64,000 nucleotides of DNA from Ascidiella aspersa (Eukaryota): the NCBI GenBank assembly GCA_963924565.1, contig OZ004607.1:9300001-9364000 (forward strand), given 5' to 3'. The translations under genes were made by a program, and so were the position numbers. The notes beneath the pieces are model-generated. The model was not told the origin of the DNA. It saw nothing but the letters and a program-made list of their open reading frames with translations, and did not search any database. This document shows, piece by piece, positions 29,503 to 62,500 of this stretch (position 1 is the stretch's first letter; each line of letters begins with the position of its first letter).

Positions 29503-32500
29503 CTGTCACGTGATGCAAGTTGCGGTGATGTGGTGCGTGACGTTAGCGAGCAATAAACAGTCAACGCCGTATATGTTGATTCTATAGGCGCTACAGGTGT
29601 CGGTTTGGCGTGATAGTTTGTTGTGAGTCATTGGAACTAAGAGCCAAGACCAAAAGGCTTCCAAAGAACCCTAGGGCCCCGACTTTTGAAAACAGATTTG
29701 TGCCAAACTGAGTCGAAACGCGGCTATTTTGGTGGCTATTCTTGCCTCGGTTGAGCATCTTTGCTGCCAGCTCAGTCCGGGATTCGCCCTCTGATTTCAA
29801 TTACCGTGTGAACCTGTAATGTCGCCGCTGATTGATGTTCATTTTGGCGCAGGGAGTAGTATGCGTGTACGTGCGTGTGCAGCCAAAGTTTCAGTGGGAC
29901 AGGTTACTAGGACTCGGATGCCGTCTCGCCATTAGCTAACTCTTACTGCTCTACCAGCTTTTCACCAACACAGCGTTACAAAACGAATTATGTTACATAA
30001 CTAACTATAATGTAATCATGAACAGTTGAACACCCATCAAAGACAGGCAAGCGAGAAACTGTGGCAAAGTATATAGAAAAATATATCTTATACAGTTTTG
30101 CGGACGATTTGTTTTAAACGAGGTTCCATTTTAAAAATAATAAAGCCATAATATTCGACAAAATCGACATTTTTTGTTGTTGAGTATTGCCGTAACGATT
30201 GTGAACAACGAATTTTCCATTTTAGGTTAAATTGTTTTCTATTAAATTTCAAACTGGGAAGCCCGGCGCAATTTTTCCAATATCTAGACCTCCATTTTTT
30301 ATCATTTACATTTTACAGTCGAATTGTAGTCTTTATGAAAGTTGTCACAGTATTTGCCCAACGGAATTGAAAAAAAATAAGTAGATGTTTTCCTAAACCT
30401 AAACTTTTCAGTCGGCGATCCCAATTAACATTTTGCTACCTTTCATGTTTGACAGAGATAAGCAAAGCATTTTGTGATGTTTTTACTTCGGCAAGCGTTT
30501 GTTAAAATAATGTACAAGTCAGTTTAAGATGATTTTTTTAACATTAACAACGCAAAAGTTTCTCAATATAATGTAAAAGTTTCATACATTTCAATTTTTT
30601 GTGTGTCGCTGTCTTCTGGTCCTTTTCTTGCACAAGCCGTAAAACTTACACACACAAACTTGCCGCTTTTCTAAACAAATCTTTTATGTTTTATTCACCA
30701 ATGGTGAAAATGGAATGGAGGAAAAATAAGTGTAAAATTAAGTGAAAGAGGTAAGGGTTGTGACTGGGTTCTTCCCATTCGCCAGAAAGAAAACCGGGAA
30801 TGACTAAAAAAAATGGCCTGAGCCCAGTCCTAGGAAGCCGGTGCCGCCGGCAGGTAGGACCAGAGTTGGTACTGCACACAACCCTTTTGTTTGTGGTGTT
30901 GATTGAGGGAAAGTTTAATATCGTCCCGCTCATAACCAAATTTCCTAAGTCATTTTTATTGATTTTCAAAGTTTTTGATCCAGTCACTCCTTGTTACCAT
31001 CACCATCCACAGAAAGCGTGCTTGGGTCATTTTTAGGTCATTTCCCACTCGCTTGTGCAAAACAATGACTTAGGCACTTTTTCTATGGATGGGGATGGCA
31101 ACAAGGAATGACTTAGGCAAAACCTCTGAAAATCATAAAAAAATGACTTAGGCAATTTGGTTATGAGCGTGACGATATAGTGGTTAAGGTGAGTAAATGT
31201 TGGTATTATTTGTCTTTAGTTTCACTTCCCCCCCCAAAAAAAAAACAGGGTTCCCTTAAAATAAGCGGATTCTACTAAATCGGTTGACTTATTCAAATAA
31301 AAAGAACAAATATCTCCCTTAAAAAATCTTCCTTTAATGCCATTGATTAAGCGTGAAGTAGAATATCTGTGGGAACAATCCATGCCGATAAAACGTGTGT
31401 ATCGTGCATCATATCAGCGCCTGTGCATCGCTACATGCCGAGAATAACCTCGGTTTCGTTTCGGGCTACGTCCCCCTTTCGAGCCCCGCCCTTTCTTCTT
31501 AGCCAATCGCTGCTCGAGCTCGTCTAAGCGGGCGTTCACGGTGAAAGATAGAAGTAGAATCTCTGCCTTCATTTTTTGCAGTCGAACCCGCTGCATATCG
31601 GCGTATTAATAAATACAAATCTCGTGTTTGTTTTAACGCTTTAACTAAGGGGATAAGAAAAAGGTTATCTTTTGAATATTTAAATTTTTAACGACAGAAC
31701 TATAGTTTGTATTGCAAGATCTGTTTTAGGCAAGTATTTCCATTTTTAAAGAGATAAGCGTTAACCAAAATACCCCCAAGCCATAAATTATTTTTCACGT
31801 AATATTTATCTGAATTAGGGTTATAAACTTACGGAACTGCTGGATCTTGTTGCTTCTCCCTAAACAACAAATAAAACACGTTTAGCTTATACAAATGCTG
31901 TTGAAATTGAGTTTTAATTGCAATTGATTTACATTTAAATTCAACATATAAACCAACATCGTTTAAAAAAATTCCTTTAAAAGCTACGTTTGTTTTGTAT
32001 TTTATGCAACTAAGTTACTGTTATTGCAGTTTGAAAGGTTTTCCCTTTTATGCTATATAAAAACCAAGTTAACTGGTGCGGACATTTACTGTTTGTTTTG
32101 GAAATTTAGGTGTATAAAATAAAATTCGTCCTCACCTTTGATCCTTTTGGTCCTGGCTCTCCCTGAAAAGTTAAAACAAAATAGAATTAAAATTCCAGTA
32201 ATGCTTCCTAATATTATTTATTAATAGTGAACACTGCGATAGCTTTAATCATTTTCTGACTAAAATTATGAAAAGCAAATATTGTTTCACAGACAAGCCA
32301 TGTTGTTATAGTTTAACTACAAATACGTAAAATATGCATCCTAAGGTAAACTTGAACCCTTTGCCATCTTTACACTATTGCCTGAAAAGTCAGATGATGT
32401 ATAACGTAAACAGATTGGTTTATGCTTACCGTGGTTCCGACGCCGGGTATTCCTTGCGGACCCATGGGGCCGGCATCTCCCTTTTCACCCTTGGGGCCGG

Positions 32501-35500
32501 CGGGGCCAGCAACTCCTGACGCAGGACTAGCCAATTCACCGGTAAAGCCTCGAGGTTGGACGTCTTGCTCTGATAATAACGTTTGTTAGGTTTAACTTAG
32601 TTTTTTGTTTGGGTAACTTTACAGTTTCCAAACGGCCTAAAATGTCCCTTTTTTGGACAACCAAACAGCCTGGACTATATTGTAAGTCGAAACAACCATG
32701 GTAAAAAACGACTTTCCCCGGCGTAAATTATATACAGAAATTCAAAAAACGCTTTACATCAAAATTATGTAATAGAGATGTAGGAAATATTCATGAAGTT
32801 CCTGCTTTTGCAGCAGAATATGTATTTTGAAAGATCATTGAAGAGGTTGAGTTAAACCATTTCTGTGCGACAAAAATACTTGGGTCTTGAACTATAACAC
32901 TTCGTAGTGCGTGTGATTCGCCATTAAAAATTAAAAAAAAAACGAAGTTAAAACAATCGGTCGACATTTGGAAATCTTTATTTTTTTTAAAAGATCATTT
33001 AAGCGCCACAAAAACACTTAAAACCATCACAGTGCGTATAATTCATCTGAAGCAGGGGTTCTTGAACTATTTTTGCCGCGGACCCCTAAACATTTATTTT
33101 GCCTCGCGGGGACCACGGTTGGTCAAAAAATGTCAAAAATACCGTCATAAATTGACGTCAAGGTACAAATAGACTTCGTAAATTTGATGATTTCGGTTAA
33201 AAATGTAAAGTAAAATGAAGTCTATTCAGTGCAAAACCGTTTTATTTTTAATTCAACTGTTTTATTTAATAACTTGGTTACTTTTTAAATAACACTAATA
33301 TTTCAATTAGGCCTTTATGGACCCCCTAAAACTAGTTCACGGACCCCCAAGGGGTCCATGGGCCCCAGTTTAAGAACCCCTGATCTAAAGATTGAAAATG
33401 GCGGACAAATAAAAAAACAACTCACGGTTCAAATCGCTCTCAAGCGTGACCGAATAGTTGAACCCGTGAGCGCCGCAAACGTCCTGGCATTCCTCGGGCG
33501 TCTCAAAGTTGTTCCCGTTGCCCCGGCAACCGCCGTACACGAACACCGAGCAGCGTCGCGTCGCCGCGTCGAAGAAGTAGCGGTAGAGCGACGCGCGACA
33601 CGGACCTGCGCGCAGCGGTTCTGCGCAGGCCACCGGAAGCGCTCCATCGGCGGCGGGCAGGTCTTTGAGAGAAAAACATTTTTGTTAAAACAAACTTCGG
33701 AAATTATAGAACGTTTTATATAATTGTTGTACAAGGAGGGTGCAATCTAAAGATATTTTTTTAAGGTTTCGTTTTGGTTACAACTGATTTTTAATGCGAC
33801 TAAACATTACTGGGTATTATCACTTAAATTGGGAAATGTTTCGGATTTTTTTGACTTACAAGGGTTAGGTGGCGATACTTTTTTTCGAATTTGATCTAAA
33901 TTGACCTAAAAGTATTTTTGCCTTTTCCCAACATACAAGAAGGGAAAACTTAGTTTAGCCCAGGGGTTATGTACTGTAGTGTGAAATTATGCGCTATTTA
34001 GGCATATATGCGCAATTTACGAAAATCAACAACAACAAAACCATTAGTAAATCGACTGATTGTTTGTGTTTTGTAAATATTGTTGAACTTACAAGATCGT
34101 TTTTGATCGTTTTTAATGCATGCATTAAACACGTATGTTATAAATACACTGAGTTTAATTCCTATTATTACAATTTTATTTACTTCCGTCGGCCATTGTA
34201 GACAGGGGGTACGAGAAAATTTTTTGAAAGCTTAAAGGGTACAAGCGCTAAAAATGCTAAGAAACCCTGCTCTATCCTATTGGATAAACCTCCGACTTCC
34301 TTACGCACTTTCAATGTCTGTTCCTTTGGGCGACGCATTTCGTGAGCTGATGGTAGGTGGATCGGGTTTGTAAGGTTCAAACTCCAGGCTCGGTTCCCCG
34401 CCGCAGACCTTGGTGCATTGGGAGGCCTCCTCGAAGCGGTTGTCGTTGCCGCCGCAGCCTCCGTACACGAACACGTTGCATTTGTCGGTGATCGGGTTGT
34501 AGTAGAACATCGGGATGGACGCCTTGCAGATGCCCTTGATCCGTGGCTTGTAGCAGCGCTCTGGTAGAGTGTCCGAGTCTGCGAGAATAAGCGTGTTGTT
34601 GGGTTAGAGTTCCAAGACTTTTTTGGGTAAATTTGTTACGCTGCATGGGCAAATTAAGCGCTAAACTGCTTGACAGACGTATTTTTAAATCAGTGTGAAG
34701 CTTTAACTAAAGAACAATTATGTTTTCAATATCAGCTATTCGATTAAATGAATATAAATAGATGGGTACACTATGCACGAATCTGTAATGTAGCTTAATA
34801 ATAAATCGATTTTTTCAAAAATTTAAGGCGTCTTTTTGTAACTGGCCAAGCTCAGTTATGTAGGCATTGGACGTGTGACTAAAATATAGTTAACTTATAT
34901 AAGGCAGGTTTTCGCTATTCACCAAAAGAGATCTGCAATACGATAGCGCCGAGTTGGATGCCCGCAAATACAACATTTTTTGTGTTACACGTTGTTTACG
35001 TCTTTTTAGGTGGATAGAGCAAATAATTTTGAAGTATGAGCTTAGAGCCTAGATTTCACGAAAAATAAACAATTTAGACCCAAACTAGAAATCATGCCCT
35101 CCATAAGCCACTTTACTCTTCATTTACGTCGAAAACAAATCCTACCCGAATGCAAAAACGACGGCTCTTTTCCGCCGCAAGCGTCGCGGCATGCCCAGGG
35201 CGTGAGGAAGCGGTTAGCGTTGCCAGAGCAACCGGAGTAGGTGAAGAGCTTGCAGCGGTTCTCCTTGACACTGAAGTAGAATCGAGGGAATCTGCCCCGA
35301 CATGAGCCGTCCTTGCGGGGAAAGGTGCAGATCTTGGGCAGATCTAGCCTTGGGGCGTCGACTGGAAACGCAATAGAATAGTTTTAGGATGAGGCACCAC
35401 ACTTGCAAATGGGTTGTTTTGTTTCGACAGGCCTTGTAGGCTTATGTTGTATTTTCGGCGCTGGTCTAAAATCCTACCAATATTTTTAAGGTAGAGTTAC

Positions 35501-38500
35501 AACTTACACAACTAGTTATTGAAATTGGGAGAATACAAGAATAAATGCGCGACCCACCCGAACCCAAACGCTAACCCGTACCCCAACCCAACAATGTGGA
35601 CTGATTTAATAATCATTTGTTTGGGTTAGGGCGCGGGTTAGCATTTGGATTCGGTTTCGTTGCTGTTCCTAAAAAGAAAAGATTGTTGTAGGACCAGCGA
35701 CTCTAATTTTCCGATAGCAATAAAATGTGAAACTAGCACAGAAAGATAAACCATTGCACGTTTTGGTATAACTCTTTTTGTAATTTGACATTCCATTATA
35801 GCACATGTCTTGTAATAAATTACCAAACTCTTGTTTTAAGATAGTGGCGTTACTAAAGAACTTTAAAATGTGGAAATTTTGACACCTTTTGGTAGCAAAT
35901 CGCATTAACGATTGTGTTTTTAGATCTATTTTTATTCACATTCGTGTCAATTTGAAATAATCCTCATTAACAATGTTATAATGGCAATTTAAGAAATGTT
36001 ATAGCTTACATGAAAAGTAAAATTGTTATTTACCGACCTGATGCTTAACAAATTGGATGCTTTTTATTGCGCGTGATTGTACACCATATAATAGAAATCT
36101 CTTTCAGTCGAAAAAAAATTTAAAGGTATTTAAAACGAATATAACCTTACTGAAAGTGTCAACCGAATAATTTACGGTACACGAAAGGCCAGAGTTACAA
36201 AGCGATACAAAAATACAATGGTAATCTATTTTAAAATACCACCATCAAAAATATACCCACAACACAATAGGCGTTATTAAAAAAAGTTTGCAAAATAAAA
36301 TACAAAAACCCAGTGTGATGTTGCAAGGTAACTAAAACCGAAAAACAAAGTTAAAAATGTGATGATCGACGTGTTATTGAAATCATAAACAAAAATATAT
36401 ATGGGATTGAGCTTTTTCGTTTTTTTGTAAGATGGCTAAATAAAAACGCCCATAACATGAAGCCGCAAAGCAACGAAAACAAAAATATTGATTATTTTAT
36501 CGGCGCAGCTCCAAAAATATAAACAAAATGTGCTTGATTGCGCCGGGCGAAAGAGTCTTATGGCTTCGTGACAAACTTACTATTTTCGGGGGTAGAAACC
36601 CCGAAAATCATGTAGGGCCCCTGGCACACGCTCTCGCACTCGCCGGGGGTGTGGAACCGGTTCCGGGTGACCGAGCAAAGGCCCCGCGGCGCCCGGAAGC
36701 AAACATCGACCCGATAGTCGAAGTAATACTCGGGGAAAGTGTGATTGCAAGTGTCGAACTGAACCGCGTCCAGGCAGCGTCTTTGCGGCGGGTCGCCGAA
36801 GGCTGTTTTGAACATTTCAGTTTGACATGAGCTTTTACAGCAATAAACCAATAGGAGAATAAGCCAACAGTGTTGTAATGACTTAAGTTAATTAATTGGC
36901 ACTTGAGTCGCTGTTTTTAAATGACTTGACTTGACTTAAGTCTTTTGGATAAATGACTTGGGCTAAAATGAAGAGTTTTGATTAAGCAATTTTGGTAGAA
37001 AAATGGGTATTTATCCTAATTTTTTGGACACCAAAATCAAAACAAATTGCAAGAAACCGACGTAATGGAAAATAACGGTTGTTAAAGAATAATCTGTAAA
37101 TAATGATTGTTAAAGAATAAACTATCCATAAAACCGGGCACGTGTGTTTATTACCGTTGGTACGTCCGCATAAAAGATTTTAACTCGTAACTAAATCAAT
37201 CCACTGTTTTTGGAAAATGTATAGTTTTAATGTCAAAGAAAAATAAAAAAAAAGGGAATTTGTATTGGAGCTCTTTAGATGCTTTTCGTTTGTAAAAAAA
37301 CGATTTTTTACGTCAGAATTGCGCCCATGTTTCAAGTAAGGCGCTTCGAGCCAAACTATAGTATAATAATTTTACAGGCCCCCAAAAACGTTTCGTTCGA
37401 ATCAGTCGCCTTTTCTGCTGTCAAACTCAAATCACGATAATTTTTTTTAATATTTCTCACCTATTTCTGACGGCGGGGAAACCCCGATCGGTGGCGCACC
37501 GTCGATGCAGGTTCTCTTGCACAGCTCGGGCGTCTCAAAGTTGTTCGCGTTTCCCTCGCAGCCTCCGTACACAAAGCGCTGGCAGGTTCCGCTGGCCTCG
37601 TTGTAGTGGAACTTGGCGAACCGGCCTCGGCACGGACCCGAGTCGACTGGCAGTATACAGCGCGAGTCGGTCCCTGAGAAGGATTATATAGGTTTTCGGA
37701 TAATGTGGTTTTTCGGTTTTCTTGTCGGTGTCGTAACGGTGAGTCAATGTTTTTTAAACAATTGACTTGGCGTCGACTGTTTCGAATAGGGTTGATTTCT
37801 TGTGTCTATTTTGGTAGAGCAGGGGTTCATAAACTGGGGTCCATGGACCCCTTGGGGGTCCGTGAACTGATATTAGGGGTCCATGAAGGCCTAATTAAAG
37901 AGCTAGTGTATACTTAAAGTAATTAATTTTTAAAAGAAAACACTTTAATTCAAAATTAAACGGTTTTGCACTGAATGTATAGTTAGACTCCATTTAACTT
38001 TCACATTTTTCGGACCGAAATAACAGAGTCACGAAGTCTATTTGTATTGTGACGTCAATATATGACGTCATTTTGGAGCATTTCTTGTCTACCGGGGTTC
38101 ATGCAAAGCCAAAAAAAATTTGAGGGGTCCGCGGTGAAAAAAGTTTAAGAACCCCTGTGGTAGAGAGTAAGGCGTCCATTTTTACATTTAAATCCGTACA
38201 CTTTTCGGTTTTGACTTTTTTTGACCTTGCGAGCATTGTAGTCAAATAAACTTAGACCTACCTGTTATTAATTTTATGGTGTGATGATCTTTTTATTAAA
38301 ATTAAATGACTTTCTGAACCTTTAGGTTACAAATACTTCACTTAGGAGCAAAATTATCTTATTTGATTTGTATCAAGTTATAAGACAGCATTAAATGACT
38401 TGAATTAGGTCTTTGTTATAATAGTAAGAACTTTTTGCCCTGTTTATGGTTTAGTTTTCAGTGTTCTGGCGACTTAACTGCTGCCAAAGTGACCTGCCTG

Positions 38501-41500
38501 TCCTAAACGTTTGGTAAAGAATCGATGAGTTGACTTAGCCCTTTGGACAACTGTTATCGTGGAGCATGAAATTATTTTGTTCAGAGTTCATGATTTAAGC
38601 GTTGACTTTTGTTACTAACACAATTAAATACTTAAGGTATTTAAGAAATAACAATTTGCACGAACTATTAATGGATAAAATGAAATTGAATTAGGACTTT
38701 GAACCGCATTTGTTCTTCTGTCATTTCGAGCTCTGATGTTTTCGCAAATGCAATTAGATGACCGCAAAACGCGTCAACGTTAAACGATAAGCAATGACAC
38801 GCACCCCCATTAGTCGCAATCTAACGCTGACAGACGCGAGAGCGCTCCCAACTTAGAACGCCTTCAAATACCGCTATCTCGCCAATCGCTTGCCGCAAAT
38901 CCGAACTGTCAGTCTGTGATGTAGGACAGGGGCCTCGAAACACGCGATTCGGGGCCGAGTTCAAGTGCCTAACATCTATCATTTTTTCCTTAAGTCCCCA
39001 TTGAATCGCCCAGCGCATTCCAAGGTTAATAGGCTGCTGCTAGGATCGTGCAGTTATTCGTCAGTGCGTTGTGTACTAGGGACACGGGTGAGATCTGACT
39101 AAGCTCTTAAGCTGACGTGATGTTTTCTTCGCGTGTCAAAAAAACCTCCGAAGGGTCTGGGAATAATAAGATTGCGAAGTCGAAAGGAGTGGCCTAATTT
39201 GACGATTTTTTCTGCCAAGTTATTTAGGCGCCTTAGAAGAAAGTCGTCGGCTTTTCTTTTAAATCGACAAGGTCAGCAGCAAACCACGGATCTTGCAATT
39301 TTCTATAACCAATTAGTTCCCAGCAAACAGGAATTTACAGTTTCTTTGATAAAAAACGTTAAGGAGCTGGTTTAAAAATTTAGAGCTAAACATTAACGTC
39401 CTTCATACTATAGTTTGACTTGGAATTGAATCAAAATCATTTTCAGTAACGACCCAAATCAATCGATCCCTATTTGGGTTTGGTATAGTTGGCATTCAAC
39501 CAATTTCAACAAAAAAACTATTGATCTACTGCGACCTTCCTACTGAAGTTACATTTTTCTGCGAAAGCACTTTAAAAACGTTTAAACATGTAACTATTAA
39601 AAAAAATAGTTTGAATTAAAAGTGTATTTGGATATCCGTAAATAGAAGAATAACAAACGTTTTGAAAAACTTTATAAATCCCATTTTTTTTATATATTTT
39701 ATGACTGAAAAAGTGTGTTTCGAGACTCGACAACTTTTAAGACACATATAGAACACCCTTAATGCAATTGGACTTGACCGCAAACGGACTGGCACCGACC
39801 TTGCGGAGTCATGCGAGAATTGACTCCCGACAGTGGACACTGAGACGACTTCTCCACGGACCGCCTGGTCCTGTCCTCCACCCCGTCGTAGTCGTACTCA
39901 TACGCAGGATAATCTTCAGGAGGCCGCTCCGCGCTTCGCTCCTGGTGGGATGAAACGGAGGAAGAGGATGATGAAGATGAGGTCTCCTCCGATCCGTCGT
40001 CATCCTCGCCGCTTCCTGGAAGATGGTGAAAGAAGAAAATGTTGAATTTCGCAAAAAAACGAAAAAATAATTATAGCAAAGCCAGAAAGATATCCAAAGC
40101 AGAACCGGGGGCAAATGACTTTTAAACCCATGAAAATAGAGTCAGATACATATGTCTTATTTAGTAAAATATCGCTTCGCCACAAAGCTAACCGCTTTTA
40201 CCGATTGCAATCTTTCAATTGCCAACTTTCGATAAACGGCCACAAACTATTTTATCTATTTATTTACAAAACGGTGATGATTTTTAACGGTTGCAATCTA
40301 TCAAATTGTCAATGTTATTTTATAATATTTTGCAAAAAAATAACTTTAGATAAACGGACGCAAACTTTTTCCAAGGTGTCAGTGAATCATAGTAATTCGC
40401 ACTTTAAGCTATTAGGTTCAAGAATATTTTCTGTAGGACATTGTAATAGGTCAAACATAACCCTGTTTAACCAGGAAAAATTTATTTTGACAAAATTGAA
40501 GGGTTTTTAAAATGTGCAAAAGTCAACAAAGGTTTACTCAAAGGCTAACACTATGCTACCAATGTCTCTGTATGGGTGTATCATCGCAGTCACTTTAAAA
40601 TTGTTCGAAAGAGTTACACAAAATTTACTCCAACGCACGATTTACTAGCAATTTGTGCGAAGCTGAGGGGGTTACAGTTTGAGATGGTAGTTCTCTTATA
40701 AAGCCAATACCTTTCCGATGTTTTAACCTCTCACCTTCTCCGCTGCTTGCGTCCTCATCGGCCGGGCAGCAAACCTGGCAGCAGTAGCCCTCTGGCACGT
40801 ATTTGTGTTGGCAAGAGGTGGTCATCGGGCACTCGATGGAGAAGCAGTGGACGTCGCCGTCCAGGCAAACGCACTCAGTACAGGTGTCCGACTTCCACAG
40901 GTGGTTGTTGGCGTAAATTTGTCCCTCGTGTATGCACGCGTTCGAGCCTTTGGTGTCGATTGGGTGCGGGGAGGCAAGAAAAACAAAGTAGCATTGGTTA
41001 GATTTAGACGACTGAGGGCTGGTTGTTTTGTTTACTTTCGAAAAAACTACTCGGATCGTGATTGGCTGAGCGAAGCGAAACGTAACAAAGCGGCGTGATT
41101 CAAAGTGCGCGCTAGGTGGAGGCAAAGCGTGAATAATTTACTTTTGCAATGATTTTTTTTTGTTTTTGTCGCTAATGCAACCGATTTTGGCATAATTGTG
41201 TGGTAATTATTACCGCAGTCGATTATTAAGTTGAGTTTTTGGCGGTGTTGGCGAGAAATTAATCTTGCCGGTTGCACAAAAAACAAAAAGCAATGAAAAC
41301 TTACAAACTCGCAGGTTCGGCAGTTCTTGCAAAAAAATTGGAAAAATCCATCATTTGGATTGAAGTGCCTTAGGTTTAAAGGCTTTTAAGAATACACAAA
41401 ATGATCTAAATTCTTTACAAAACTAGCGCTAGGCAAGCTAAACAAGGTTTAGTCGCATCTAAGCAGGTTCTAATCTAATGCAACCCAATAGCCTTTGGTA

Positions 41501-44500
41501 GAAGTGTAAAGAATCCAGGACCTAGGTTATTCGCCAAGGAACCGCCGTACTTGCCAGTTTAAAGATATAAAGCGTCGGATAAAAGCACAATTAAGCAACA
41601 CCAAAATCGCATGCAGCTAAATGTTTCACTATAACAAACGGTAAACACACACATAAGTCTAAAACTACCAAACAAGTGTACAGTAATGTCATGCAGTTGA
41701 CTAAAAGCGGTGCGCTTGTGAAGGGTGTTTGTGACGTAACAGCAGTGCTGACGTGTCATTGCGCCAAGTGAAACGAATATTACCACTGGATTATTATCAC
41801 CTTTTGTACACCGATGTCATGCAAAATTGTAACTGCGGTTTGGTAAATTATTAAACAAGTGACTTTCAAAAATCGAGATGTATAAATTATATGCTTAGCA
41901 ACTTACACAGAAATAAAGTGTAAACTTTTTCGATCTTTTTTTGACATGCCTATGTGGCAGACTGGCAGTTTATCTGTGGTGGGTTACTGATGTAGCCCCA
42001 ATGGAGACGACTTAAGTGAAAAGGGCAATCAATTACAGATAGAAAAGTAGTAACGATGATTGGTATTAATACACAACACGAATGAGAAAGGAATGACGCG
42101 GAGAGAAGAGTGCAATTACTGCAATGAATCAAAAGCAAATGTTCACCAAATTAGTGTCCAGCTGGGCCCCTTAATTTCAAACCAGTTCCCTTATTATCCA
42201 TTCTTGCAGTATCCGTATAGAACGTGCCTCTTTTTAAACACACGTTTTGTAAGAATAGTTTTTACGCAAATGAACTTTGACAGAAAGGGTGTTTTGGCAA
42301 TAGGCTCGATTTCGTTATTGACAACTGCAGCTAATTTTTATTTGTTCTTTCCGTTATATATTTTACAGTTTTACGAAATATTGCCCAAACAAAACTATAA
42401 GAATAAGGCAAAATAATTTACCAGGCACAATTTTTCGTTTTAATCGTTCAACAAATATGAAGCTTGAGTCGGATTTAACTTGCAAGTATTGCAAAACACA
42501 ATTTAGCCCAAATTTAACCCAGATCTTTAACGTGTATTACCCAAGCATTGGAGCCCAGCTGGTTGACGCAATTACAAACTACGGTCACCACTTCCCATCT
42601 TCTGCTAACAAGCAATCTACTACAAAAATGGGCTGAGTGGTGCCAATTGAGTTAGGGGGTAGGGTTGAGGGTTGGATTGATCACTCTACACCAGCACACC
42701 AAACCGTGGGGGGAGCAGGGGGTGTCCCGGGGACTCACCACAGGCCGAAAACATGACGTCATCAATTGCAACGGAGGCCAGAGCGCCGGGCATGGGGCGC
42801 GCTTCAAAAATCACTTGGAAGGGTTGCTTGTAATCGGGCAGGGGCACGGCCGTTCGCCGCCAAGCGTCCTTGCCGCCGGCGCTGACGTCAGAGGTGACGT
42901 TGAGCACCGGAGTGCGGTAGCCGGCGTTGCACGAGAGTAGGTAGACTTGCAGCGGCGGAGTGCGCGTCGTTACTTGGGCGTCGAGAGAGCGGACGAGGTA
43001 GCGGAAAGTCATGCAGATTCCCTTGAGCGGGTTGACGAAGAAGGGGCTTGATAAGGTGCCAACCGCCTGTGGCGCTGAGGTAGTTTCGTGGTATTCTGCA
43101 TAGTGGTTCAGTCGCCCTTCACTCCAAGGCGTCTCGCCGCTTTCAACGTCCGAATACCCATCGTCGTCGTCGTTTAGATCGTTGGCCGGCCGCCGAGACG
43201 CGAAACCCCGCCGATTGTTTGACGCTTGCAGCGTTTCACTGGCGACTTGCCACGAAGCGTCGGTCTCGAAAAGACACATCGTCCCGCCGCCGCCCTTCCG
43301 CTTGGTGGCGCTGGTCTCGTCGCGCTGCCGCTTGCGGCGCCCCGGCAGCGACATGACGTTCTCGCGGTCGAAGTCGCAGCTCAGGTCGGTGACGATTCGC
43401 TTCCACAAGACACCAGCGCAGAATTGAACGGTCGGCGGGCCGTCGAAGGAGAAAACCCCGCCGAATGGATCGGACGGCGTCGGGCTCACGGTCGCTGCGC
43501 ATGGTTGGCGGTGAACAACCGAAATCGACGGTTTTAACCGACGCCGGGTAAACATAATGGGTCTCGGGCCGGGGTGAAAGTAGAACAAGTTTCTTACCGA
43601 AACGATGTTTTTTGTTTTGTTTAGTAAAACTAATTTATTTACCGGAGAACATAAAATTTTCAAAGATGGCATCACAACGGGACGTCTAAGACAAGTAAAC
43701 TTAGGAAATCTGGATTTTTGTTATAAAACTGAAATCTTAGTTTAAATACATCAAATGAGATGTCGGTATGGCCTGGTCAAAAAGGACAGTTTTCTCCCCA
43801 TAATTTTTTATTCCGGACTGTTCCGGCTTACTTTTACCTTTGGTCTCGTGGTTGGGTTTTTCGGCAAATGCACGCGTTACACACCAGTCAGTAACTGGCT
43901 AAAAATCGCGTTCTGCAAAGGCCGTGAGTCAGAAAACGTGCGGCGCTTTTAACGGCTGCCAAAACAAACGAGTTTCGAGACGAAAATAGCGGTTCATCAC
44001 ACAACTGCGACCTGGCGCTCCGGATATACGGAAGGCTGACTTACTAATTTTTCGGCCAGTGGCGATGCCAAGAAATAAACCCAATTTCCTTTTTCGAGTC
44101 GCGACAGGATGCCGGGTTAATAGGGGGTCTGAGTAACGGTCCATCACACGTTAATTGTCTGTGTTATTTGCCCGATTAAAATCAACTTCGCTCGAATTTG
44201 AACCGTTTAATCGAAATTTACTCGTCTTTATCTGACAAGCGTTTAGTCATCAATGTTATTATTTTACCGGACTACAAAAATAACTGAATAAGTGAAAAAC
44301 GGCCCACCACTACCCTTGAATCGATAAAAGGACTAGGTCTTTACCAGGGGTGGATTCAGGATTTTTGTTGGGAGGCACATTAATTTTTTAGGGTCAATGT
44401 CAAAAAATAACGCCATGGCGTGACATCATAAAACGACTATTCTGTGCACGGACAAAATTATAAATAAATACAGTCTAGGGCTAGGCGAAAAATGCGTTTA

Positions 44501-47500: not shown

Positions 47501-50500
47501 GGTTTAAGCGCAGCTCTGCTTTAACTAACAAGTTAAACAAACAAGTACTTTCGCTTACCCGGAGAAACAACTGGGGTCGATTCTGAGGGGGTGGCCGTCG
47601 AGTCCGGGCACCCGCACACCCCGGGTGGGCCAGGTGGCCCCGCAGCGCCCTGAATTCCGGGTAATCCCCGATCGCCCTTGACCCCAGGGGCCGACGAATT
47701 CCCGTTACCAGGAGGGCCAGTTGGGCCTGCTGGACCTATGTCGCCTCGTTCGCCTGCAAAGTAAAAGTGTAAAATCGGATGCTAAGTTATGTAACTGGCT
47801 GTGGTATATATTGTGACTAGGGATGTCCGATACTTGACATTTTATTCCGATCCTGATTCCCAATTTTTTGGATAAAAAGTACCACAATCCGAACCACACG
47901 ATGTCATTACTGTGTCCAAATAAGCATAATACTGTAGTTGAAATCAAAACGTTTAAACGGCAATTTTTCCCAGGTTATTTGGCCATAACTTGCTTCACCG
48001 TTAAGATGTTCAGTTGTTAAAACAACTTAGATTTTGAAAATAACATTTAAGGCAGAATCACTACGTTAGATCTCAAATCATGTCTGAATTTCCATCTCAA
48101 TTTGTTTTGTGTGTTTACCACCCTAGTGTCGGACGAGTCTGATACTTCCACTTGGGAACGGCTATCGGCTCCGATATAACATTATAGGACAACCCTAACG
48201 GTGATCTAGCCCGGCTGAATACTCACCAACGATTATGACAAACTCCGGTTTGGGCCGAGGTCGTGAGTTCGAACCTCACTGCAGACTTGATTTTACTAGA
48301 TTTGATAATCGTGTTTAGGCCAACTGATAATAATTTGTCCGAAGGCACCCGGTGTAATTAACGTGCTTTGTTTAAGCGTAATTTTGATTAGGAAAAAGAA
48401 AGCGCTGTTTACAAAGTCTTTTACAGTTTTGAAATTCAGCCTTACCTTTAAGGCCATTTAATCCATCTGTTCCATTTACTCCCGGTTCTCCTTTAGCTCC
48501 ATCCAAGCCTATTTGACAAAACAATTACACTTTTTAAAACTGACTTTTCTTGTCGCTAAAGTAATATAATAAAGTATTGCTTTGGAAGCATATTGGCTGC
48601 ACATTTATTGACTGGGAAAAATAAGATCTTATAAACACTCTAAATTGTAAATTTGCTGACAACAACCAATAAGCCTTACACAGCGACTTTTGCCGTTTTC
48701 ACGCAGTATTTTATTTAACTTACCTGTTGGTCCTATGTCTCCTTCTTCTCCTTTTTCACCTTTTAACCCACTGGTTCCGGGGGCTCCCGTGGCCCCAGGT
48801 GACCCCGCCTCACCCCTGTCGCCCTTCAGACCGGCGAAGCCGTGAAGGCCCATCATTCCCCGGGACCCCTTTTGACCCTTGGGGCCGACAAGGCCAGGTT
48901 GTCCTGTGAGTCCGTCGGGGCCTGGCGGGCCGGCTGGGCCAGCGGCGCCGCGCGGGCCAGGCTGGCCAGGGGGTCCGACGGCACCTTGCGAAGTTGCTGG
49001 GCCTGTTGTCTGAAAAATGAAACGAGGGTGATTAAAACGATAAATTCTTATGTCAAGCCAGGGCTAATCAAGGTCGTATTTCGATACCGAAGCCTTTTGG
49101 TCAAATCCAATATAAAATGACGACATGTCGGTAATTATCAAAAGAGATGGACTGATAAACCATAAATGTTTGATGTTTTTTTCACCAGATAAGATTAAAT
49201 CGCCTTTAAAAAAATAGTTAAAGGAATAGTTTAATTATGAACTTCATTGTTAACAGTCAGTTTTAAATTTACTATTTTTATACAAAAAACTTTGGGGTAA
49301 AAAAATAAAACTTTGGGGGTAAGGTAAAGATCACTTCGTTGGATTGCAATCCTTGGCTTAACATGCCTATGTTAGTTTGATGTCGGATCGGCACCGATAC
49401 CACCCCAGTATCGAAAGAGTGCCAGTCCCATCACTTGACATCGGGTATCGACTCAAACAGACACCAAAATGACTAAAACGGCCACCCATGAGATGAATGC
49501 AGGTAGTCCATCCATATTTTTCAGGCTTGTATATGAGTCAGCGTCTACGATCCGCGTATCGCTCATGTGTGGTTCACAGCAAAAGAGGTCGACCTTTATG
49601 GTGGCTGATCGGGTTAAGTTCTTCTTCGTGAAAACGTTCGTTATTTACCGCTTTTCAATCAGCAGTAGGATTTCGGGATTGTTTTGATGAACATCACTAG
49701 TGACTACTACAGACAATGACAGACTGTCTATTAAAACTATTGGTTGTTTTACAAGCATTTCAAATACATCTTTCCCTGGGTATATTTTGGAAATGACAAT
49801 CACCGTCTATAATTGCCAGGAAAGGTTTTTTATTCATAAATCAACCGAACGAAAGCGGGTTTACCGAGGATTTCTTGGTTGTCGTCTTGGACATAGGTTT
49901 TCTGTATGATCCAAATTCACATTCCGGTTTATTTTATATTCATTTTCCGGCAAACAGAAATTTTTATTTTCACAAGAAATATTTAAAATAAGGATCAACT
50001 TAGTGTTTTGCTGAAAAAACGGTATATTTGGTTCCACTTGTCGTAAATATGGTAAATATACCGTTGCAACCAGTATACTACCACAATGAGGAATAGCGGC
50101 TGTGGTTACGTAAAAAAGCGCGTGGCTAACTTATAGCGCAACTATAGGTATGTCCGACACTTTGACATTTTATTCGTATACCGATACCCGATATTTTTGA
50201 TCTTTACCAAATGACACCATTACTAAGCCTAAACGAGCAAAATATATGAAAAAAAACGTTTAAAGTAATTTTTCCACCAGGTTACTAACCTAAAATTTGC
50301 CTTAGCGTTAAGAAGTTTAGGTACGCCCAGTTGTTAAAATAATATACTTTTCAATATATACTTGTTGTTCACCGGTAAACCGAGTTAGTCATTCACAAAA
50401 CGGCACTCATCCGATCAAACCGGCTCGTATAGTGGTTTAGACCGCCACCGGCCTCCCGACCAGACTAATGTGGTGTTTGTTGCTCGCGGCCGCCAGACCG

Positions 50501-53500
50501 ACAAACCTCGGCGGGCCGTTTATCGCCAAAGCAAACGCGGTCGGCTTTCTGTTTATTTTCGCCAATCAAGATTAGCTGCGCAGTTCCGTTGCCTGGTCAC
50601 GTCGGGGCCTTTTTTAGGCCAGTTTGCTTGGCCGATTTGCTAAACGGCAGGTTCCCTTTTCGAGAAACTTCTATTCAAGGCCCCTGGTAAATCGACAACT
50701 CGCTAGGACACTTTATAAATGTCCGATACTTTGTATTAACTCCGATATCGATACCCTGGTATTTTAGGATGAAAGTACCGCTGATCAGATCCGATACCAA
50801 ATGACGTAAATACTATATGCCTAATTCGGCAAAATTAAAATACTTGCTCTTGATGGAAAGAAAATCATTGGTGCTGGACAACTTCCCTTATTGTTGACAT
50901 ATTTAATGTAAAAATATAAAATCCTGATTTCTTGACTTTTTATTTCTTTTAAAATAGAACGCTCAGTTAAATTGGAAACAATCGTTGAAATTTTTCAACT
51001 AATTTGGATTGGCACAGATACCAGCCTAGTATCGGATATGTAACGACATTTCTACAATATAAATTTTCTTTCCAGAAGTCTACTATATTATTCTAAAATT
51101 TTTCTGGCATTTTTTACAATATTAAACACAGCTTTAAAATAGGAACCGGCCAAAAGAACTGGCCACTGTATTCGGCGCATAAAGCCTGATCGCATTGAAG
51201 GATTATGACTCGGCCTAAACAATTGGATGATTGCACGGATAGGCTCCCGACTACAAGGAGGTTTTAAAATCGGATTTTACTGGTAGCTTTGGTTCAAAGG
51301 TTAGATCATTACTGGTTTAAGTTTAGTTGTTCAAAGGATCTTTGCTTGTTTAGCTTTAGTTGGAATAATTTCAAACGAAACGCGTTTGACTCACGGTAAT
51401 ACTCAGCTACTAAGGGGTTTTGGTTTTTATTCACCCCTGTCCCTTGATGTTTCGCATCAAGGATTTTTAACCTGCATTGAAGCGCCCGCAGAAGCAGTCA
51501 GGGCGGGGATTCACCTGTTGAGAATTCCTTTGGTGATATCTCGAAACAACGCGATAAAAAGGCTGAGCTTTACATCGCTGTTTTCAAAAAAATATTTGTG
51601 GTTTAGGTTTTTTGACACGTTTTACTACTTTTTGGTAAAGTGGTTCAATCAACTTGTAATTTTTAGTTAATTGCAAAACTTTCAACGAAGAAAGCTCATC
51701 TTTTTCGATAGTAACTATATTCAACAAAATTGAGCTCAGTAGTCTTCCACTTTGAAATTGTCCACCATCTTTGTCCATAGATATGCCTATATCACCAGAT
51801 GTTTTTGTCCAGACTGAGTTTAAATTGAAGTTCGATAATTTCATTTTATCACGGCAAAGTTGAACTATGTATACTAGCCCAGGCTTAACACTAGACAAAC
51901 GATTCGAGGCATCTTATATTATATGTACTGCACTGTGAGGGCAGTTTCTTATGCTTGCCGCCAAGGAAGGAAACAAGCCGAAACGACGTTCACGTAGCGT
52001 TGTGCGTTTGGTCAAGTTCTAAATCCAAAACTTCCCGAAGCTTTCGATCCAAGCTAATATTTCCTTGTTTAGTATACGGGTGGTTTGGGCCAATTTTTGG
52101 AAGCCTGTTTAAGGCCTGTCACTTTATACTCCCTATATCACCGCATCAAAAGGATATCCTGATCACACCCTGGCTGTAGACGTTCCCGACAGCACACAGA
52201 CGCGCAGATCGTGGCGGAGATTAAACAGCCATTATTAAGTGTGCCAGTTTACATTTGCGCTTCGAAACCAGTCGAGGCCCTTTTTTACCGCTATCTTGTT
52301 TTCGTGTAGTTTTCGCCCTGTCGGTTTAGAATGGGACAGGGAAAATATGCCAACTCATCTGTCGCTGAGCGTATCAGTCACAGAATGGAGACGTGCTTTG
52401 TGCTGTAGCGAAATATACGTTTTCAATGATTAATTTTTAAATATGGGGATTGGGGATTTTTTATCGATTTACTTGTTAAGTAAAATCTATTAACTCAGTT
52501 CGTTTAAATATATATGTATTAGCCAATGGTAGAGTTTTTGAAGGATAGTAAGCCCAAGTACAAAGTAGAGGCCACGTGGCGCAATCTTTTTTAACATTTT
52601 GCTGGAATCTGTAAAATTGAATATTCCCGGGTTCGATCAAAAATCATTCCAAGTGTACGCCAATGAGTTTGCTCGTACACTCGGCTTGAATTTGCATATT
52701 CACTTGGCTCATGTTATATCAAAGTATTTGTCTTAAAGATAACTGTTTCGACCTTTTCGCGTAAGTCTAAAATATTGAAAAAATCGTGTTTTAATCATTG
52801 TTGAACTCACCTGTTGTGATAATTGCTCGACCTTCTCTTTGAGCGCTTCCACGATTGAGCAGTTGAAGCAAACTGCAAAAATTAAACAAAATATATTACA
52901 TATCGGTGTTGTGTTGTAAAGAAGTCACCTTTGAAATGAATTGATTCTAAGTTATGCCCCAAGTCATGTCAATATTATAGCAAGTCAACTTTAAGGCAAA
53001 TTACTCCAAAAAATGAAACGTTAAACTATTAAAATTTGGTAAAGTTGTTTGATTATGAAAAATTTAATAACTCAACTAAAAAATAACAAACATCCAACAT
53101 ATTACAAGCTAATTGTTTTAATTGCACAACTTCAAATCAATGTCCCAGAAGCCTTTAGAACAGATGTGACAATAAGCCAAGAAATGGTGTGTGACGAATT
53201 ACCTATACGCTCATGTACTTTGCAACGAAACGCGTATCCGTCGGCTTGATGGGACAAGGAAATGTCAATTACAAGCTTACATCCAATCGTGCGAAATGTA
53301 ATTGTGAAGGACTCCAGTCGTGGCTTGGAAATTTTCACACACGATTTCCATATTATGTCAACATCATTTTTGCCAGAAAGGGGAAGCGTCTTGACTTTGA
53401 TTGCTTTCGTGGTAAACGCTACGTGACAAAATCTAAAAGTGTGCGAACGTACGCGACTTTCAAAGAAATAAGAACTCGGCAGAAGTCTGACTGAAAAGGG

Positions 53501-59500: not shown

Positions 59501-62500
59501 TGTTCGAATTTTAAACTTATTGTAAGCCTTTTTTATGCTTTTTTCGTTTTGTTTGCTTTAATTAATTAGCCTCTTAACTGGGGGGTCTATGGGCCCCAAA
59601 GGTTTCAACATAGAGACCTATTGAAAGGGTCTACAGGCTTTTCTGTGATGTGTTACTTCTGTCGATAAGCTGCGAAAAAGCTCATAAACAAGTTTGAAAC
59701 AATGGCTATCTGATCAACGGAAAAAGTAGAAGTTAGGGCCGGTTTTGTTCTTCGCATTTATGATGTAGCTCCAGGGATAAGTCTTTTACTCGTATCTGTT
59801 CGGGGTAAATACATTATCCCAACAAACTTGGTGGTCCACGGACAAAAATTAGTTGCAAATTCCTGGTTTATTTGAATGAACAACAAATATTTTTACACTT
59901 TTATCTGAACCAATGATTTTTCGTTTAGTTTTAGTTTTGAAAAAAAAATTTGGCTTCGAGTTTCGCCTTCCTTCAAAAAGACGGCAAACATTTTTTCACT
60001 TTGAAATAGTTAAAAAAAATTTCTCGGAAAATACTAAGCGGATCGCTGAAAAACCAAGATTTGAAATTGTCTTGCTAGTTGGGAGAATTTGTTGTGTATG
60101 AAGCAACGAAGGTGCAACATTATTTTAAGCTGATTGTTTCTGTTTGTCGCAACAAGAAAGCACCGCCTTAACGTAATAATTTTACCTGACCTGGACAATT
60201 TGAATACTGTTCGGGTTTCCTAGAAATCGCTTTTAATACGATTATGCTATTTCATCTTAAAATAGTGTAAGAAGTGTGTAATACTTTAAGCCCAATGGTA
60301 TGAGACTATGTTTGTAAGCATTATGTAATTAGCTTTTCCAGTAACAAGTTAAAACTTAAAAATATAACCGTCAGAGGTTGGAGGTTGTGCAGTAAGAGGT
60401 AAAACCAATGTGACAAGATACAAAACTAGGTAGCATTGTGCAGCCTTTTCAAATTCATCTGAATCATTATGTGACTTTTTAAACAAATTATTCTATCTGG
60501 CGACACGGGTCATCAAGCTGAGAGGTCTGATACTGGATATTTTATTCCGATGCAGTTACCCGATATTTCGAACAAAAAGTATTGCTATCCATTTAGATAT
60601 CAATTGACGTCAATACTATGCTCAAATGTTCAAAATTATAAATTCGAACGTTAAAAAGCCTTTTTGTTTCGGGTAACCAGGCCAAGATTTTGGTTTAGCA
60701 TTTCGAAGTGTAGTTACCTTCAGTTGTTGAGCAATTATGTTTTAATAAATTCCGCTTTTATATGGCTGCTTTCGTTCGCAAATCGCAGCTGAAATTCCTA
60801 TTGGCTTGTTATCGGATTGGCACCGATACCACCCTAGTATCGGACTAGTACCGACCATTTTGCATCGGGTATCGACTTCGATCCAAGATGATCGGATATC
60901 CTTAGGTATAAAGTATAAAATATTGGATTCTGAAACATCAGACATCTCAAATCGTTTTTAGTATGGCTGTAATAAAAATCCTCTCAGACCGGACGATAAT
61001 GAATAGAACGACTTGGCATCCGGTATCGGGTACGATAGGATAATATTGGACAATTTAAAACGATAGTATATAGTAATCAATAATAAGTATCTTTATATTC
61101 CAATTTAGGTTAACACGTGAAACTCAATTCTCAACGCATTCTAGTGTAAGGTGATTAAAGTTGTTTCTTAAATGCCTCTTCTGCTGATAGGATATTATCG
61201 GATAATGTTAACAAGGACCTTCGCCGATTTCGGTCTTACCGTTGCTGCAGGTATCCCCAGAAAATCCGGGACAGCATCGCCACTCGTCCCTGGTAACAAC
61301 TGCCATGCGCGTCGCGTAGAGACGCCGACGGGCGATGACGTAACTGGAAATGTAAAGCAAGAGTTTGTAATCGCGAAATATAAATAGATATTTGACCGTG
61401 AAACGATAGTTTATACTGCAGGGGTAACCAACACGTGGATCGCGATATCGACTGGTCGATCCCTGCATTTCACCTGGTCGATCGCGTCCAATATGTGTTA
61501 CTCATTACAGTAGCTGCCTCACACAAGCGAAACATTAAACCAATTGTTGTCTGGACAAGCCTAATAAAGCCTTCTTGAACGTAACAAATTAACCTCCATC
61601 GCTGGCTTAGAATGCTATTAACGCTCAAAATGTTTAATAAGTGTTCTTGTGAATTTTTTTAATGAACCAGTCGATCGCGAGTCTTTAAAACATATTTCCG
61701 TCGATCGCAAGTTGGCTACACCTGGTATATAGTAATTAAATAATAGGTATCCTTTATGTTCCAATTTAGGCGATTTTAACAGGTGAAACTCAATGCTTAA
61801 CACATTCTTGTATAAGGTGACTCAAGTTGTTCATCAAATGTCAATTCTGCCAAAATCTTAGTTTCCTAAACCATTTTAAATTGCCTACATAGGTTTGAGA
61901 ACCTGGTGCACTAAAGGGCCACTACATCGAACTATAAAGAAGTACACAACTGCATTATTTACAATAGAAAACTCGTTCAACATGTGTTTTATTAAAAACT
62001 GTAAACAAATGAAATTTCGGTCTTGTGTTTTCGTTAAACAGCTTGAAGGTCCATGTGATTTAAAACAGGGAAAATGTCACGGAATGCGAAAGTGGTTAAT
62101 TGTTGCACAACTATAATCAATTACTATTAAACTATGTTGATACTAAGTAAACTAAAAACGCAGTTGTTATTAACTTATCGCTGGACGATAAGAGTTTCAA
62201 ATTGAAGAACCTCTTCCCAAAGCGGACCGCATCAGCCAAAGGACTCAATTCGGCAAGGGGACAGAAATGGGAATTCCCCGGGGAAATAGGATCATTCTGA
62301 CGTAGCGAGCGAATCATCACAATGCGATAATGTGCTGTCATGCGTTGCCAGCAAATCTTGCGACACGAGAACCCATTAACCGTGGAACGCAGATCAGTCA
62401 ACAGTTGCCCTATAATATCTTGTTGAGTGACTCATTAGCCCGGTTGTCGTTTCTGGGTGTTGAACGATGCCATTCAATCGTCGGGCGTGAAAACCGCAAG

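What the first reader, a model, noticed from the sequence alone, without database searches (positions are those of the whole stretch)
33426..43494. The whole insert is eight symmetric phase-1 exons: an exon-shuffling cassette that can be spliced in or out
Seen: exon lengths 756, 213, 216, 213, 222, 216, 270 and 237 nt are all multiples of 3 and all phase 1-1, one domain per exon (2343 nt, 781 codons). The flanking donor (47559) and acceptor (32569) are also phase 1, so a direct join stays in frame (G+AG=Glu) and gives about 490 aa in window, close to a conventional EMID1/COL26A1. Known: class 1-1 modules are the standard units of extracellular exon shuffling. Inference: the ancestral gene gained the modules within one phase-1 intron and may make a short structural isoform plus combinatorial long isoforms.
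Basis: partly seen in the sequence, partly recalled or inferred. Interest (0 to 1): 0.75.

Follow-up and report, generated by a model that had tools for sequence, protein, structure and literature searches.

The report
Domain-per-exon block inside a collagen gene
Eight real exons, each coding one protein module and each cut in the same reading-frame position, sit between the two collagen parts of a sea-squirt-type collagen gene. The RNA available shows them included rather than skipped, so this is a clear but textbook trace of exon shuffling.

Summary
On the minus strand, eight AG/GT-bounded exons of 756, 213, 216, 213, 222, 216, 270 and 237 nt are all phase 1-1. They code for MAM, VWC, an acidic Tyr-rich linker and five Kunitz domains; 7 of 8 have Pfam hits. 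The flanking collagen exons end and start in phase 1, so a direct join would read GAG (Glu).

Spliced contigs of one RNA-like run reproduce the Kunitz exon borders to the base. One contig runs K3-K4-K5 into the downstream collagen exon.

An unnamed second species in two metagenome contigs has the same order: EMI, collagen, MAM, VWC, acidic exon, first Kunitz. It has the same phase-1 borders at 42-63% amino-acid identity. The block is therefore old and conserved, not a recent insert.

The "spliced in or out" part has no support. No skipping joint was seen, and the one RNA contig passes unbranched into the downstream collagen exon. The 47559->32569 junction itself could not be tested.

Gain by exon shuffling is plausible. 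Vertebrate and echinoderm collagen XXVI are described as only EMI plus triple helices. That is textbook in kind.

The scan noted the same gene before (s1-801584).

The parts
63318..63512 (-). EMI domain, first half (exon, borders approximate)
   Evidence: Cys pattern; 57% identical to L003 101-295. No Pfam hit on its own. Single copy in the genome.
61229..61360 (-). EMI domain, second half (exon, borders approximate)
   Evidence: Pfam EMI PF07546, E 1e-5, 26.6 bits against cut-off 25, profile positions 40-69. 63% identical to L003 1296-1418.
52802..52879 (-). Conserved short exon between EMI and collagen (heptad-like, borders not set)
   Evidence: tblastx, 50% over 26 aa to L003 4425-4502, collinear.
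48724..49009 (-). Collagen exon C1, 286 nt, phase 0 to 1
   Evidence: Sequence read; Pfam Collagen 1.2e-16; splice table.
48446..48508 (-). Collagen exon C2, 63 nt, phase 1-1
   Evidence: tblastx to L003 6859-6897.
47559..47753 (-). Collagen exon C3, 195 nt, phase 1-1. It ends the first triple helix with GVCGC and a Ser/Thr/Pro linker. Donor at 47559.
   Evidence: Pfam Collagen 9.4e-8. The L003 counterpart 8543-8755 is also 1-1.
42739..43494 (-). MAM exon, 756 nt, phase 1-1, with a basic loop (RRKRQR...KRK) and an acidic loop inside the domain
   Evidence: The L003 counterpart 9909-10715 (807 nt) is 1-1.
40735..40947 (-). VWC exon, 213 nt, phase 1-1
   Evidence: Pfam VWC 5.8e-13. The L003 counterpart 12954-13163 (210 nt) is 1-1, 59% identical.
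39800..40015 (-). Acidic Ser/Tyr-rich linker exon, 216 nt, phase 1-1, with RTRR followed by S..CP
   Evidence: Its last two bases AG fit the 2-letter overhang of X2 record 14. L003 14172-14363 (192 nt) is 1-1 and has RRKR.
37461..37673 (-). Kunitz exon K1, 213 nt, phase 1-1, P1 Arg
   Evidence: Pfam 4.7e-21; X2 record 14. The L003 K1 starts at 15504 in phase 1, 55% identical.
36581..36802 (-). Kunitz exon K2, 222 nt, phase 1-1, divergent, P1 Asn
   Evidence: Pfam 4.4e-6; X2 record 12 matches both ends exactly.
35146..35361 (-). Kunitz exon K3, 216 nt, phase 1-1, P1 Arg
   Evidence: Pfam 4.7e-17; X2 record 9.
34309..34578 (-). Kunitz exon K4, 270 nt, phase 1-1, P1 Lys, with a Pro/Ser tail
   Evidence: Pfam 1.3e-18; X2 record 9.
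33426..33662 (-). Kunitz exon K5, 237 nt, phase 1-1, P1 Arg
   Evidence: Pfam 1.3e-20; X2 record 9.
32430..32569 (-). Collagen exon C4, 140 nt, phase 1 to 0 (nine GXY triplets). Acceptor at 32569.
   Evidence: X2 depth 68.3 at 32447-32460 and 0 at 32575; bin depth 48.1 against 47.8 expected if record 9 covers exactly this exon.

Best explanation
The eight exons are ordinary coding exons of one single-copy gene for a secreted collagen XXVI/EMID-like chain, and they are included in the RNA seen here. By earlier notes and a GH6 hit, the animal is probably a sea squirt. The protein reads: EMI domain, a long interrupted triple helix closed by a Cys pair, then MAM, VWC, an acidic Tyr-rich linker with a dibasic site, five Kunitz domains, then a short second triple helix and a C-terminal part.

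Each module lies on its own exon between phase-1 introns. The host collagen exons also split their Gly codons in phase 1, so only 1-1 modules could be added without breaking the frame. The block was most likely built long ago by exon shuffling into the linker between the two helices, plus tandem duplication of a Kunitz exon. It has been kept since, because a second, distant species has the same order and phases.

The symmetry is a trace of how the gene was built. It is not a sign that the block is switched in and out. Inferred function: a trimeric, matrix-bound carrier of up to 15 Kunitz inhibitor heads (4 of 5 per chain with Arg or Lys at P1) plus a VWC and a MAM module.

Shown: exon borders, phases, domains, inclusion of K1-K5 with the downstream collagen exon in RNA, and conservation. 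Inferred: the C3-to-MAM join, the mode of origin, trimer formation and inhibitory function.
For: Exon borders, lengths and phases. Domains: 7 of 8 exons; EMI, collagen.

RNA: X2 contig record 9 is spliced K3|K4|K5 at the predicted bases and runs on for 195 letters. Depth arithmetic places 140 of them exactly on C4. Record 12 is K2 exactly. Record 14 is K1 plus 428 letters, whose length fits acid+VWC+1. Contig depths of 49.7, 66.1 and 68.3 are alike. The few X5 reads on the exons have the first mate on +, as expected for an RNA from the minus strand in a usual stranded library.

Single copy: the MAM, EMI1 and C3 exons each match only themselves in the 308.6 Mb genome.

Conservation: L002 and L003 carry EMI1 (L003 only; L002 starts downstream of it), EMI2, C1, C2, C3, MAM, VWC, acidic exon and K1 in the same order and strand. 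C3, MAM, VWC and the acidic exon are 1-1, and K1 starts in phase 1. All 7 MAM-exon relatives whose sequences I read end in C-G-E/K, the read-through of G|GTGAG or G|GTAAG, which marks the same phase-1 donor.

All five Kunitz exons keep the six Cys.

Outgroups described without the block: review passages.
Against: The C3-to-MAM junction (47559->43494) was not seen in RNA. It rests on order, strand, matching phase, the lack of a start or signal peptide in the MAM exon, and conservation.

The 428 letters of record 14 and the first 30 of record 12 were not shown to me; only their lengths and the bin depths fit.

Inclusion is shown in one sample, from contigs, which drop rare forms. X2's kind is not on record; I call it RNA-like because its contig is spliced and most intron bins are empty.

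Contigs break at K1|K2 and K2|K3. I explain this by low-depth unspliced reads (depth 3-8 in those introns), but a minor alternative join would give the same break.

Orthology to collagen XXVI was not tested by a tree. No full-length annotated relative was found.
Confidence: 0.7

Rival explanations
1. One reading: the block is a regulated cassette. Some transcripts join 47559 directly to 32569 to give a short conventional EMID1/collagen XXVI-like chain, and others include all or subsets of the eight exons.
For: Every exon is 1-1 and the flanks are phase 1, so every skip stays in frame. X2 contigs break at the VWC acceptor, K1|K2 and K2|K3, which a minor alternative join could cause. Several acceptors have poor pyrimidine tracts (MAM, VWC, K2).
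Against: None of the 15 listed joints links exons while skipping others (47 more were not shown). K3-K4-K5-C4 is one unbranched contig. Bin depths are explained by full inclusion plus unspliced reads at depth 3-8. In-frame symmetry is also what the history of the gene requires, so it does not argue for regulation.
Confidence: 0.18
2. Two genes: a separate MAM-VWC-Kunitz gene nested in an intron of the collagen gene on the same strand.
For: The 47559->43494 junction was not seen. The intron before the MAM exon is long, at 4064 nt.
Against: K5 is spliced to the downstream collagen exon on one contig, so the 3' side is shared. The MAM exon starts in phase 1 with no start codon or signal peptide of its own. 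tblastx finds no conserved coding block between C3 and MAM in either species; in L003 that intron is only 1153 nt.
Confidence: 0.04
3. Chance or prediction artefact: open frames with splice-like ends picked to fit the lengths.
Against: Spliced contigs match K2-K5 at both ends, and match K1 at its 3' end and to within 2 letters at its 5' end. There are Pfam hits in 7 of 8 exons. The same exons and phases occur in a second species.
Confidence: 0.01

Closest known systems
Collagen XXVI (EMID2/COL26A1) and EMID1, the EMI-plus-collagen chains of vertebrates and echinoderms
   Same: N-terminal EMI domain followed by two triple-helix segments. [quoted passage not shown]
   Different: 781 codons of MAM, VWC, acidic linker and five Kunitz domains lie between the two helices. 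No such form turned up in my paper searches. Orthology was not tested.
[quoted passage not shown]
   Same: One module per exon, both borders in phase 1, inserted in a phase-1 context, with tandem repeats of one module type.
   Different: Nothing in kind. This is a clean new example, with the host collagen exons themselves 1-1.
Collagens VI alpha3, VII and XXVIII with a C-terminal Kunitz domain
   Same: Kunitz modules on a collagen chain. [quoted passage not shown] Here a conserved dibasic site lies just before the Kunitz array.
   Different: Those have one Kunitz at the very C-terminus and vWA domains. Here five Kunitz domains are internal, between two helices, with an EMI head and no vWA.
Papilin and other multi-Kunitz matrix proteins (recalled, not tested)
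   Same: Arrays of Kunitz domains in a secreted matrix protein.
   Different: They have no EMI or collagen helix; the partner domains differ.

Membership tests
Class 1-1 exon-shuffling modules | Exon length a multiple of 3, with both flanking introns in phase 1 | tested here: met
   8 of 8 exons. Borders of K1-K5 confirmed by spliced contigs.
Class 1-1 exon-shuffling modules | Exon borders coincide with the borders of a folded module | tested here: met
   7 of 8 exons hold one Pfam domain each, with short linkers; the eighth is a linker exon.
Class 1-1 exon-shuffling modules | Recipient intron of the same phase | tested here: met
   Donor 47559 and acceptor 32569 are phase 1; the direct join reads GAG.
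Class 1-1 exon-shuffling modules | Relatives of the host gene lack the modules (gain, not loss) | tested here: inconclusive
   Literature only: vertebrate and echinoderm collagen XXVI are described without them. Orthology was not tested. The only relative whose locus I could read (L002/L003) has the block.
Class 1-1 exon-shuffling modules | A donor gene or other genes with the same module in the same phase | tested here: not met
   The MAM exon has no second copy in the genome. Donors for the VWC and Kunitz exons were not searched.
Collagen XXVI / EMID family | N-terminal EMI domain | tested here: met
   Second half: Pfam EMI 26.6 bits, over the cut-off of 25. First half: no Pfam hit, but a conserved Cys-bearing exon upstream.
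Collagen XXVI / EMID family | Two collagen triple-helix segments and no other globular domain | tested here: not met
   Two segments are present, but seven extra globular domains lie between them.
Collagen XXVI / EMID family | Groups with collagen XXVI/EMID1 in a tree | not tested
   No full-length relatives could be fetched, and I made no joined model.
Alternatively spliced cassette exons | Junction reads or transcripts that skip the exon(s) | tested here: inconclusive
   None among the joints and pieces listed for 32400-38399 in 4 runs.
Kunitz/BPTI inhibitors | Six conserved Cys and the Pfam Kunitz profile | tested here: met
   5 of 5 exons.
Kunitz/BPTI inhibitors | Basic P1 residue after the second Cys, and inhibition of a serine protease | not testable with these tools
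   P1 read: R, N, R, K, R (4 of 5 basic). The P1 position rule is recalled. Activity needs an assay.

The most novel reading that the evidence does not exclude
The short and long products are made by cutting the protein rather than by splicing the RNA. A proprotein-convertase-type site (RTRR in this genome, RRKR in the second species) sits in the acidic exon just ahead of the Kunitz array. A cut there would split the chain into an EMI-collagen-MAM-VWC matrix part and a free piece of five Kunitz domains. That piece would be held as a trimer by the short second helix and C-terminal coiled coil, giving a 15-headed protease inhibitor released from a collagen. A second conserved basic cluster lies inside the MAM domain.
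Probability: 0.2. Interest if true: 0.55.

Novelty: new variant of a known kind. Interest (0 to 1): 0.35.

Why it matters
This is a very clean natural example of the exon-shuffling rule: eleven phase-1 introns in a row, one module per exon, inside a collagen whose own exons follow the same rule. It also shows that a collagen XXVI-like gene, which vertebrates and echinoderms are described as keeping bare, was turned in another chordate-side lineage into a carrier of protease-inhibitor, VWC and MAM modules and kept that way. That gives a testable case of how a matrix collagen gains a regulatory function. It does not open a long-standing question, and the splicing idea that made the finding stand out has no support so far.

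Tried and rejected
A megablast of the MAM exon against phage records was pointless and found nothing.

The findings search by words 'Kunitz MAM collagen EMI' found nothing.

The word-based protein search with the VWC exon found no candidate. That says nothing about relatives.

The MAM-exon word search gave only two unnamed exon-sized ORFs. The full representative search gave 39 hits. I scanned 7 of the 29 long ones, and all 7 are generic multi-MAM proteins without EMI, collagen or Kunitz. The other 22 long hits were not scanned. I scanned 8 of the 10 short ones, and they carry only MAM. None of the 10 clusters looked up has a name or accession.

I hoped to use 'longest contig' sizes as a fingerprint of shared contigs. 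That came to nothing.

No insert-less paralogue exists in this genome for comparing intron phases.

Four paper searches for the architecture found no description. The library lacks most subscription journals. The echinoderm review's Supplementary File S4 (its tree) could not be seen because supplements are closed.

Vertebrate and amphioxus intron positions were not compared, as I had no such sequence and human sequence is barred.

I considered mutually exclusive use of the Kunitz exons. I rejected it because K3, K4 and K5 lie on one contig.
Full report
**What is there.** The gene runs on the minus strand.

| Exon | Coordinates | Length (nt) |
|---|---|---|
| MAM | 43494-42739 | 756 |
| VWC | 40947-40735 | 213 |
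| acidic linker | 40015-39800 | 216 |
| K1 | 37673-37461 | 213 |
| K2 | 36802-36581 | 222 |
| K3 | 35361-35146 | 216 |
| K4 | 34578-34309 | 270 |
| K5 | 33662-33426 | 237 |

The sum is 2343 nt. Pfam finds MAM, VWC and five Kunitz domains, and nothing for the acidic exon, so 7 of 8. All five Kunitz exons keep the six cysteines. The residue after the second Cys, which is the P1 position by the BPTI rule as I recall it, is R, N, R, K, R.

**Flanks.** Upstream lie three collagen exons:
- C1, 49009-48724, phase 0 to 1.
- C2, 48508-48446, 63 nt, phase 1-1.
- C3, 47753-47559, 195 nt, phase 1-1.

C3 ends the helix with GVCGC and a Ser/Thr/Pro stretch. Downstream lies C4, 32569-32430, 140 nt, phase 1 to 0, with nine GXY triplets. 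Further upstream are the two halves of an EMI domain. A direct C3-C4 join would read GAG. The phase-1 run is therefore 11 introns long and includes the host's own collagen exons.

**RNA evidence.** The run search found three runs of organism A that hold the MAM exon, one of organism B, and one raw RNA run. I laid X5, X1, X2 and X3 on 32400-38399.

X1 and X3 cover introns evenly and are DNA-like. X2 is RNA-like: most intron bins are empty and its contigs are spliced.
- Record 9 (918 letters, depth 68.3) is K3 | K4 | K5 at the predicted bases, plus 195 more letters.
- X2 has depth 68.3 at 32447-32460 and 0 at 32575. The bin 32400-32599 has 48.1, against 47.8 expected if the contig covers exactly C4.
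- Record 12 (depth 66.1) is K2 exactly, plus 30 letters upstream.
- Record 14 (depth 49.7) is K1 plus 2 letters (AG, which equal the last two bases of the acidic exon), plus 428 letters that I did not see. Its length of 643 equals K1+acid+VWC+1. The extra letter is expected because the MAM exon and the intron both end in G.
- Bin depths also fit a K1-K2 and a K2-K3 junction at about full depth.
- The contig breaks at K1|K2 and K2|K3 coincide with low-depth unspliced contigs (depth 3-8) in those introns.
- None of the 15 listed joints links exons. All lie in repeat-rich intron stretches, and 47 more were not shown.

The raw RNA run X5 had only 278 reads laid, almost all on repeats. Exon bins had a depth of at most 1.07, so it says nothing on junctions.

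**Relatives.** The MAM exon is single copy in the 308.6 Mb genome, as are the EMI1 and C3 exons. Protein searches found only unnamed, exon-sized ORFs from ENA, Logan and JGI assemblies. All 7 whose sequences I read share three features: the unusual start (C...LW....LSCDF), a basic loop, and an end in C-G-E/K. That end is what G|GTGAG or G|GTAAG gives when read through.

One relative is in JGI metagenomes, which gave two contigs, L002 and L003, 99.86% alike. On L003 the following lie in one order and strand:

| Exon | Position in L003 | Identity to the window |
|---|---|---|
| EMI1 | 101-295 | 57% |
| EMI2 | 1296-1418 | 63% |
| short conserved exon | 4425-4502 | 50% |
| C1 | 6392-6673 | 48% |
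| C2 | 6859-6897 | 54% |
| C3 | 8560-8754 | 55% |
| MAM | 9920-10714 | 42% |
| VWC | 12956-13138 | 59% |
| acidic exon | 14172-14363 | 33% |
| K1 | 15506-15679 | 55% |

The contig ends 281 bases after K1, so K2-K5 and C4 cannot be judged. In L003, C3 (213 nt), MAM (807 nt), VWC (210 nt) and the acidic exon (192 nt) are all 1-1, and K1 starts in phase 1. No full-length annotated relative was found.

**What animal.** Earlier follow-up notes on other parts of this genome call it a sea squirt (unchecked AI notes). A GH6 domain hit over Pfam's cut-off in this genome, found in none of the 14 control genomes, fits that. I recall that tunicate cellulose synthase carries such a domain. I did not identify the species of L002/L003.

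**Reading.** The block is real, expressed and old. It sits in the non-collagen linker between the two helices of a collagen XXVI/EMID-like chain. A review describes vertebrate collagen XXVI as only EMI plus two helices, and echinoderm genes as EMI plus one or two helices (passages). Gain in this lineage is therefore the simpler reading, though I did not test orthology.

One module per 1-1 exon in a phase-1 host is the textbook mark of exon shuffling (passage in PMC4686782; Patthy's rule recalled). The five Kunitz exons, at 29-41% identity to K1, look like old tandem copies. Symmetry is what the frame demands of any added exon, so it does not by itself point to regulated skipping. The RNA at hand shows inclusion.

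**A different route to two products.** The acidic exon carries Tyr-rich acidic runs and then RTRR (RRKR in L003), followed by S..CP, just ahead of the Kunitz array. The MAM exon carries a conserved basic loop. A convertase cut would release a Kunitz array still joined to the short helix. This is inference only.

**Limits.**
- As told by the operators, I made no joined model, and all searches were exon by exon.

Noticed in passing
window 39800-40015 (-) and L003 14172-14363 (+): The acidic linker exon keeps Tyr-rich acidic runs (sulfotyrosine-like) and a dibasic R-x-R/K-R site followed by S..CP in both species. This is a possible convertase cut just before the Kunitz array.
   Followed up: partly
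window 43200-43330 (-), inside the MAM exon: The MAM domain is split by a basic loop (RRKRQR...KRKGGGG) after the first strand (LSCDFD) and by an acidic loop. Both loops recur in all 7 relatives read. Pfam therefore matches only profile positions 41-153.
   Followed up: partly
window 33200-33399, 34600-34799, 36800-36999, 37800-38199: Intron stretches with summed contig depths of 6e4 to 2e5 in the DNA-like runs, against about 100 nearby. They also carry most of the raw RNA reads laid. These are high-copy dispersed repeats that are transcribed somewhere in the genome.
   Followed up: no
window 63318-63512 (-) and L003 101-295: The EMI first half keeps the stretch RFTNGTQTY unchanged between the two species. 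A paper in the search listing reports O-fucosylation of EMI domains (PMC11949838, abstract only). Whether this Thr is such a site was not checked.
   Followed up: no
window 45667-46107 (-): A 147-aa open frame sits in the 4-kb intron between C3 and the MAM exon. It has no Pfam hit and no counterpart in L003. It is probably not coding.
   Followed up: partly
G000:C5:19613851-19614090 (L006): A glycoside hydrolase family 6 match (28.1 bits, over the cut-off) in an animal genome, as expected for a tunicate cellulose synthase.
   Followed up: no
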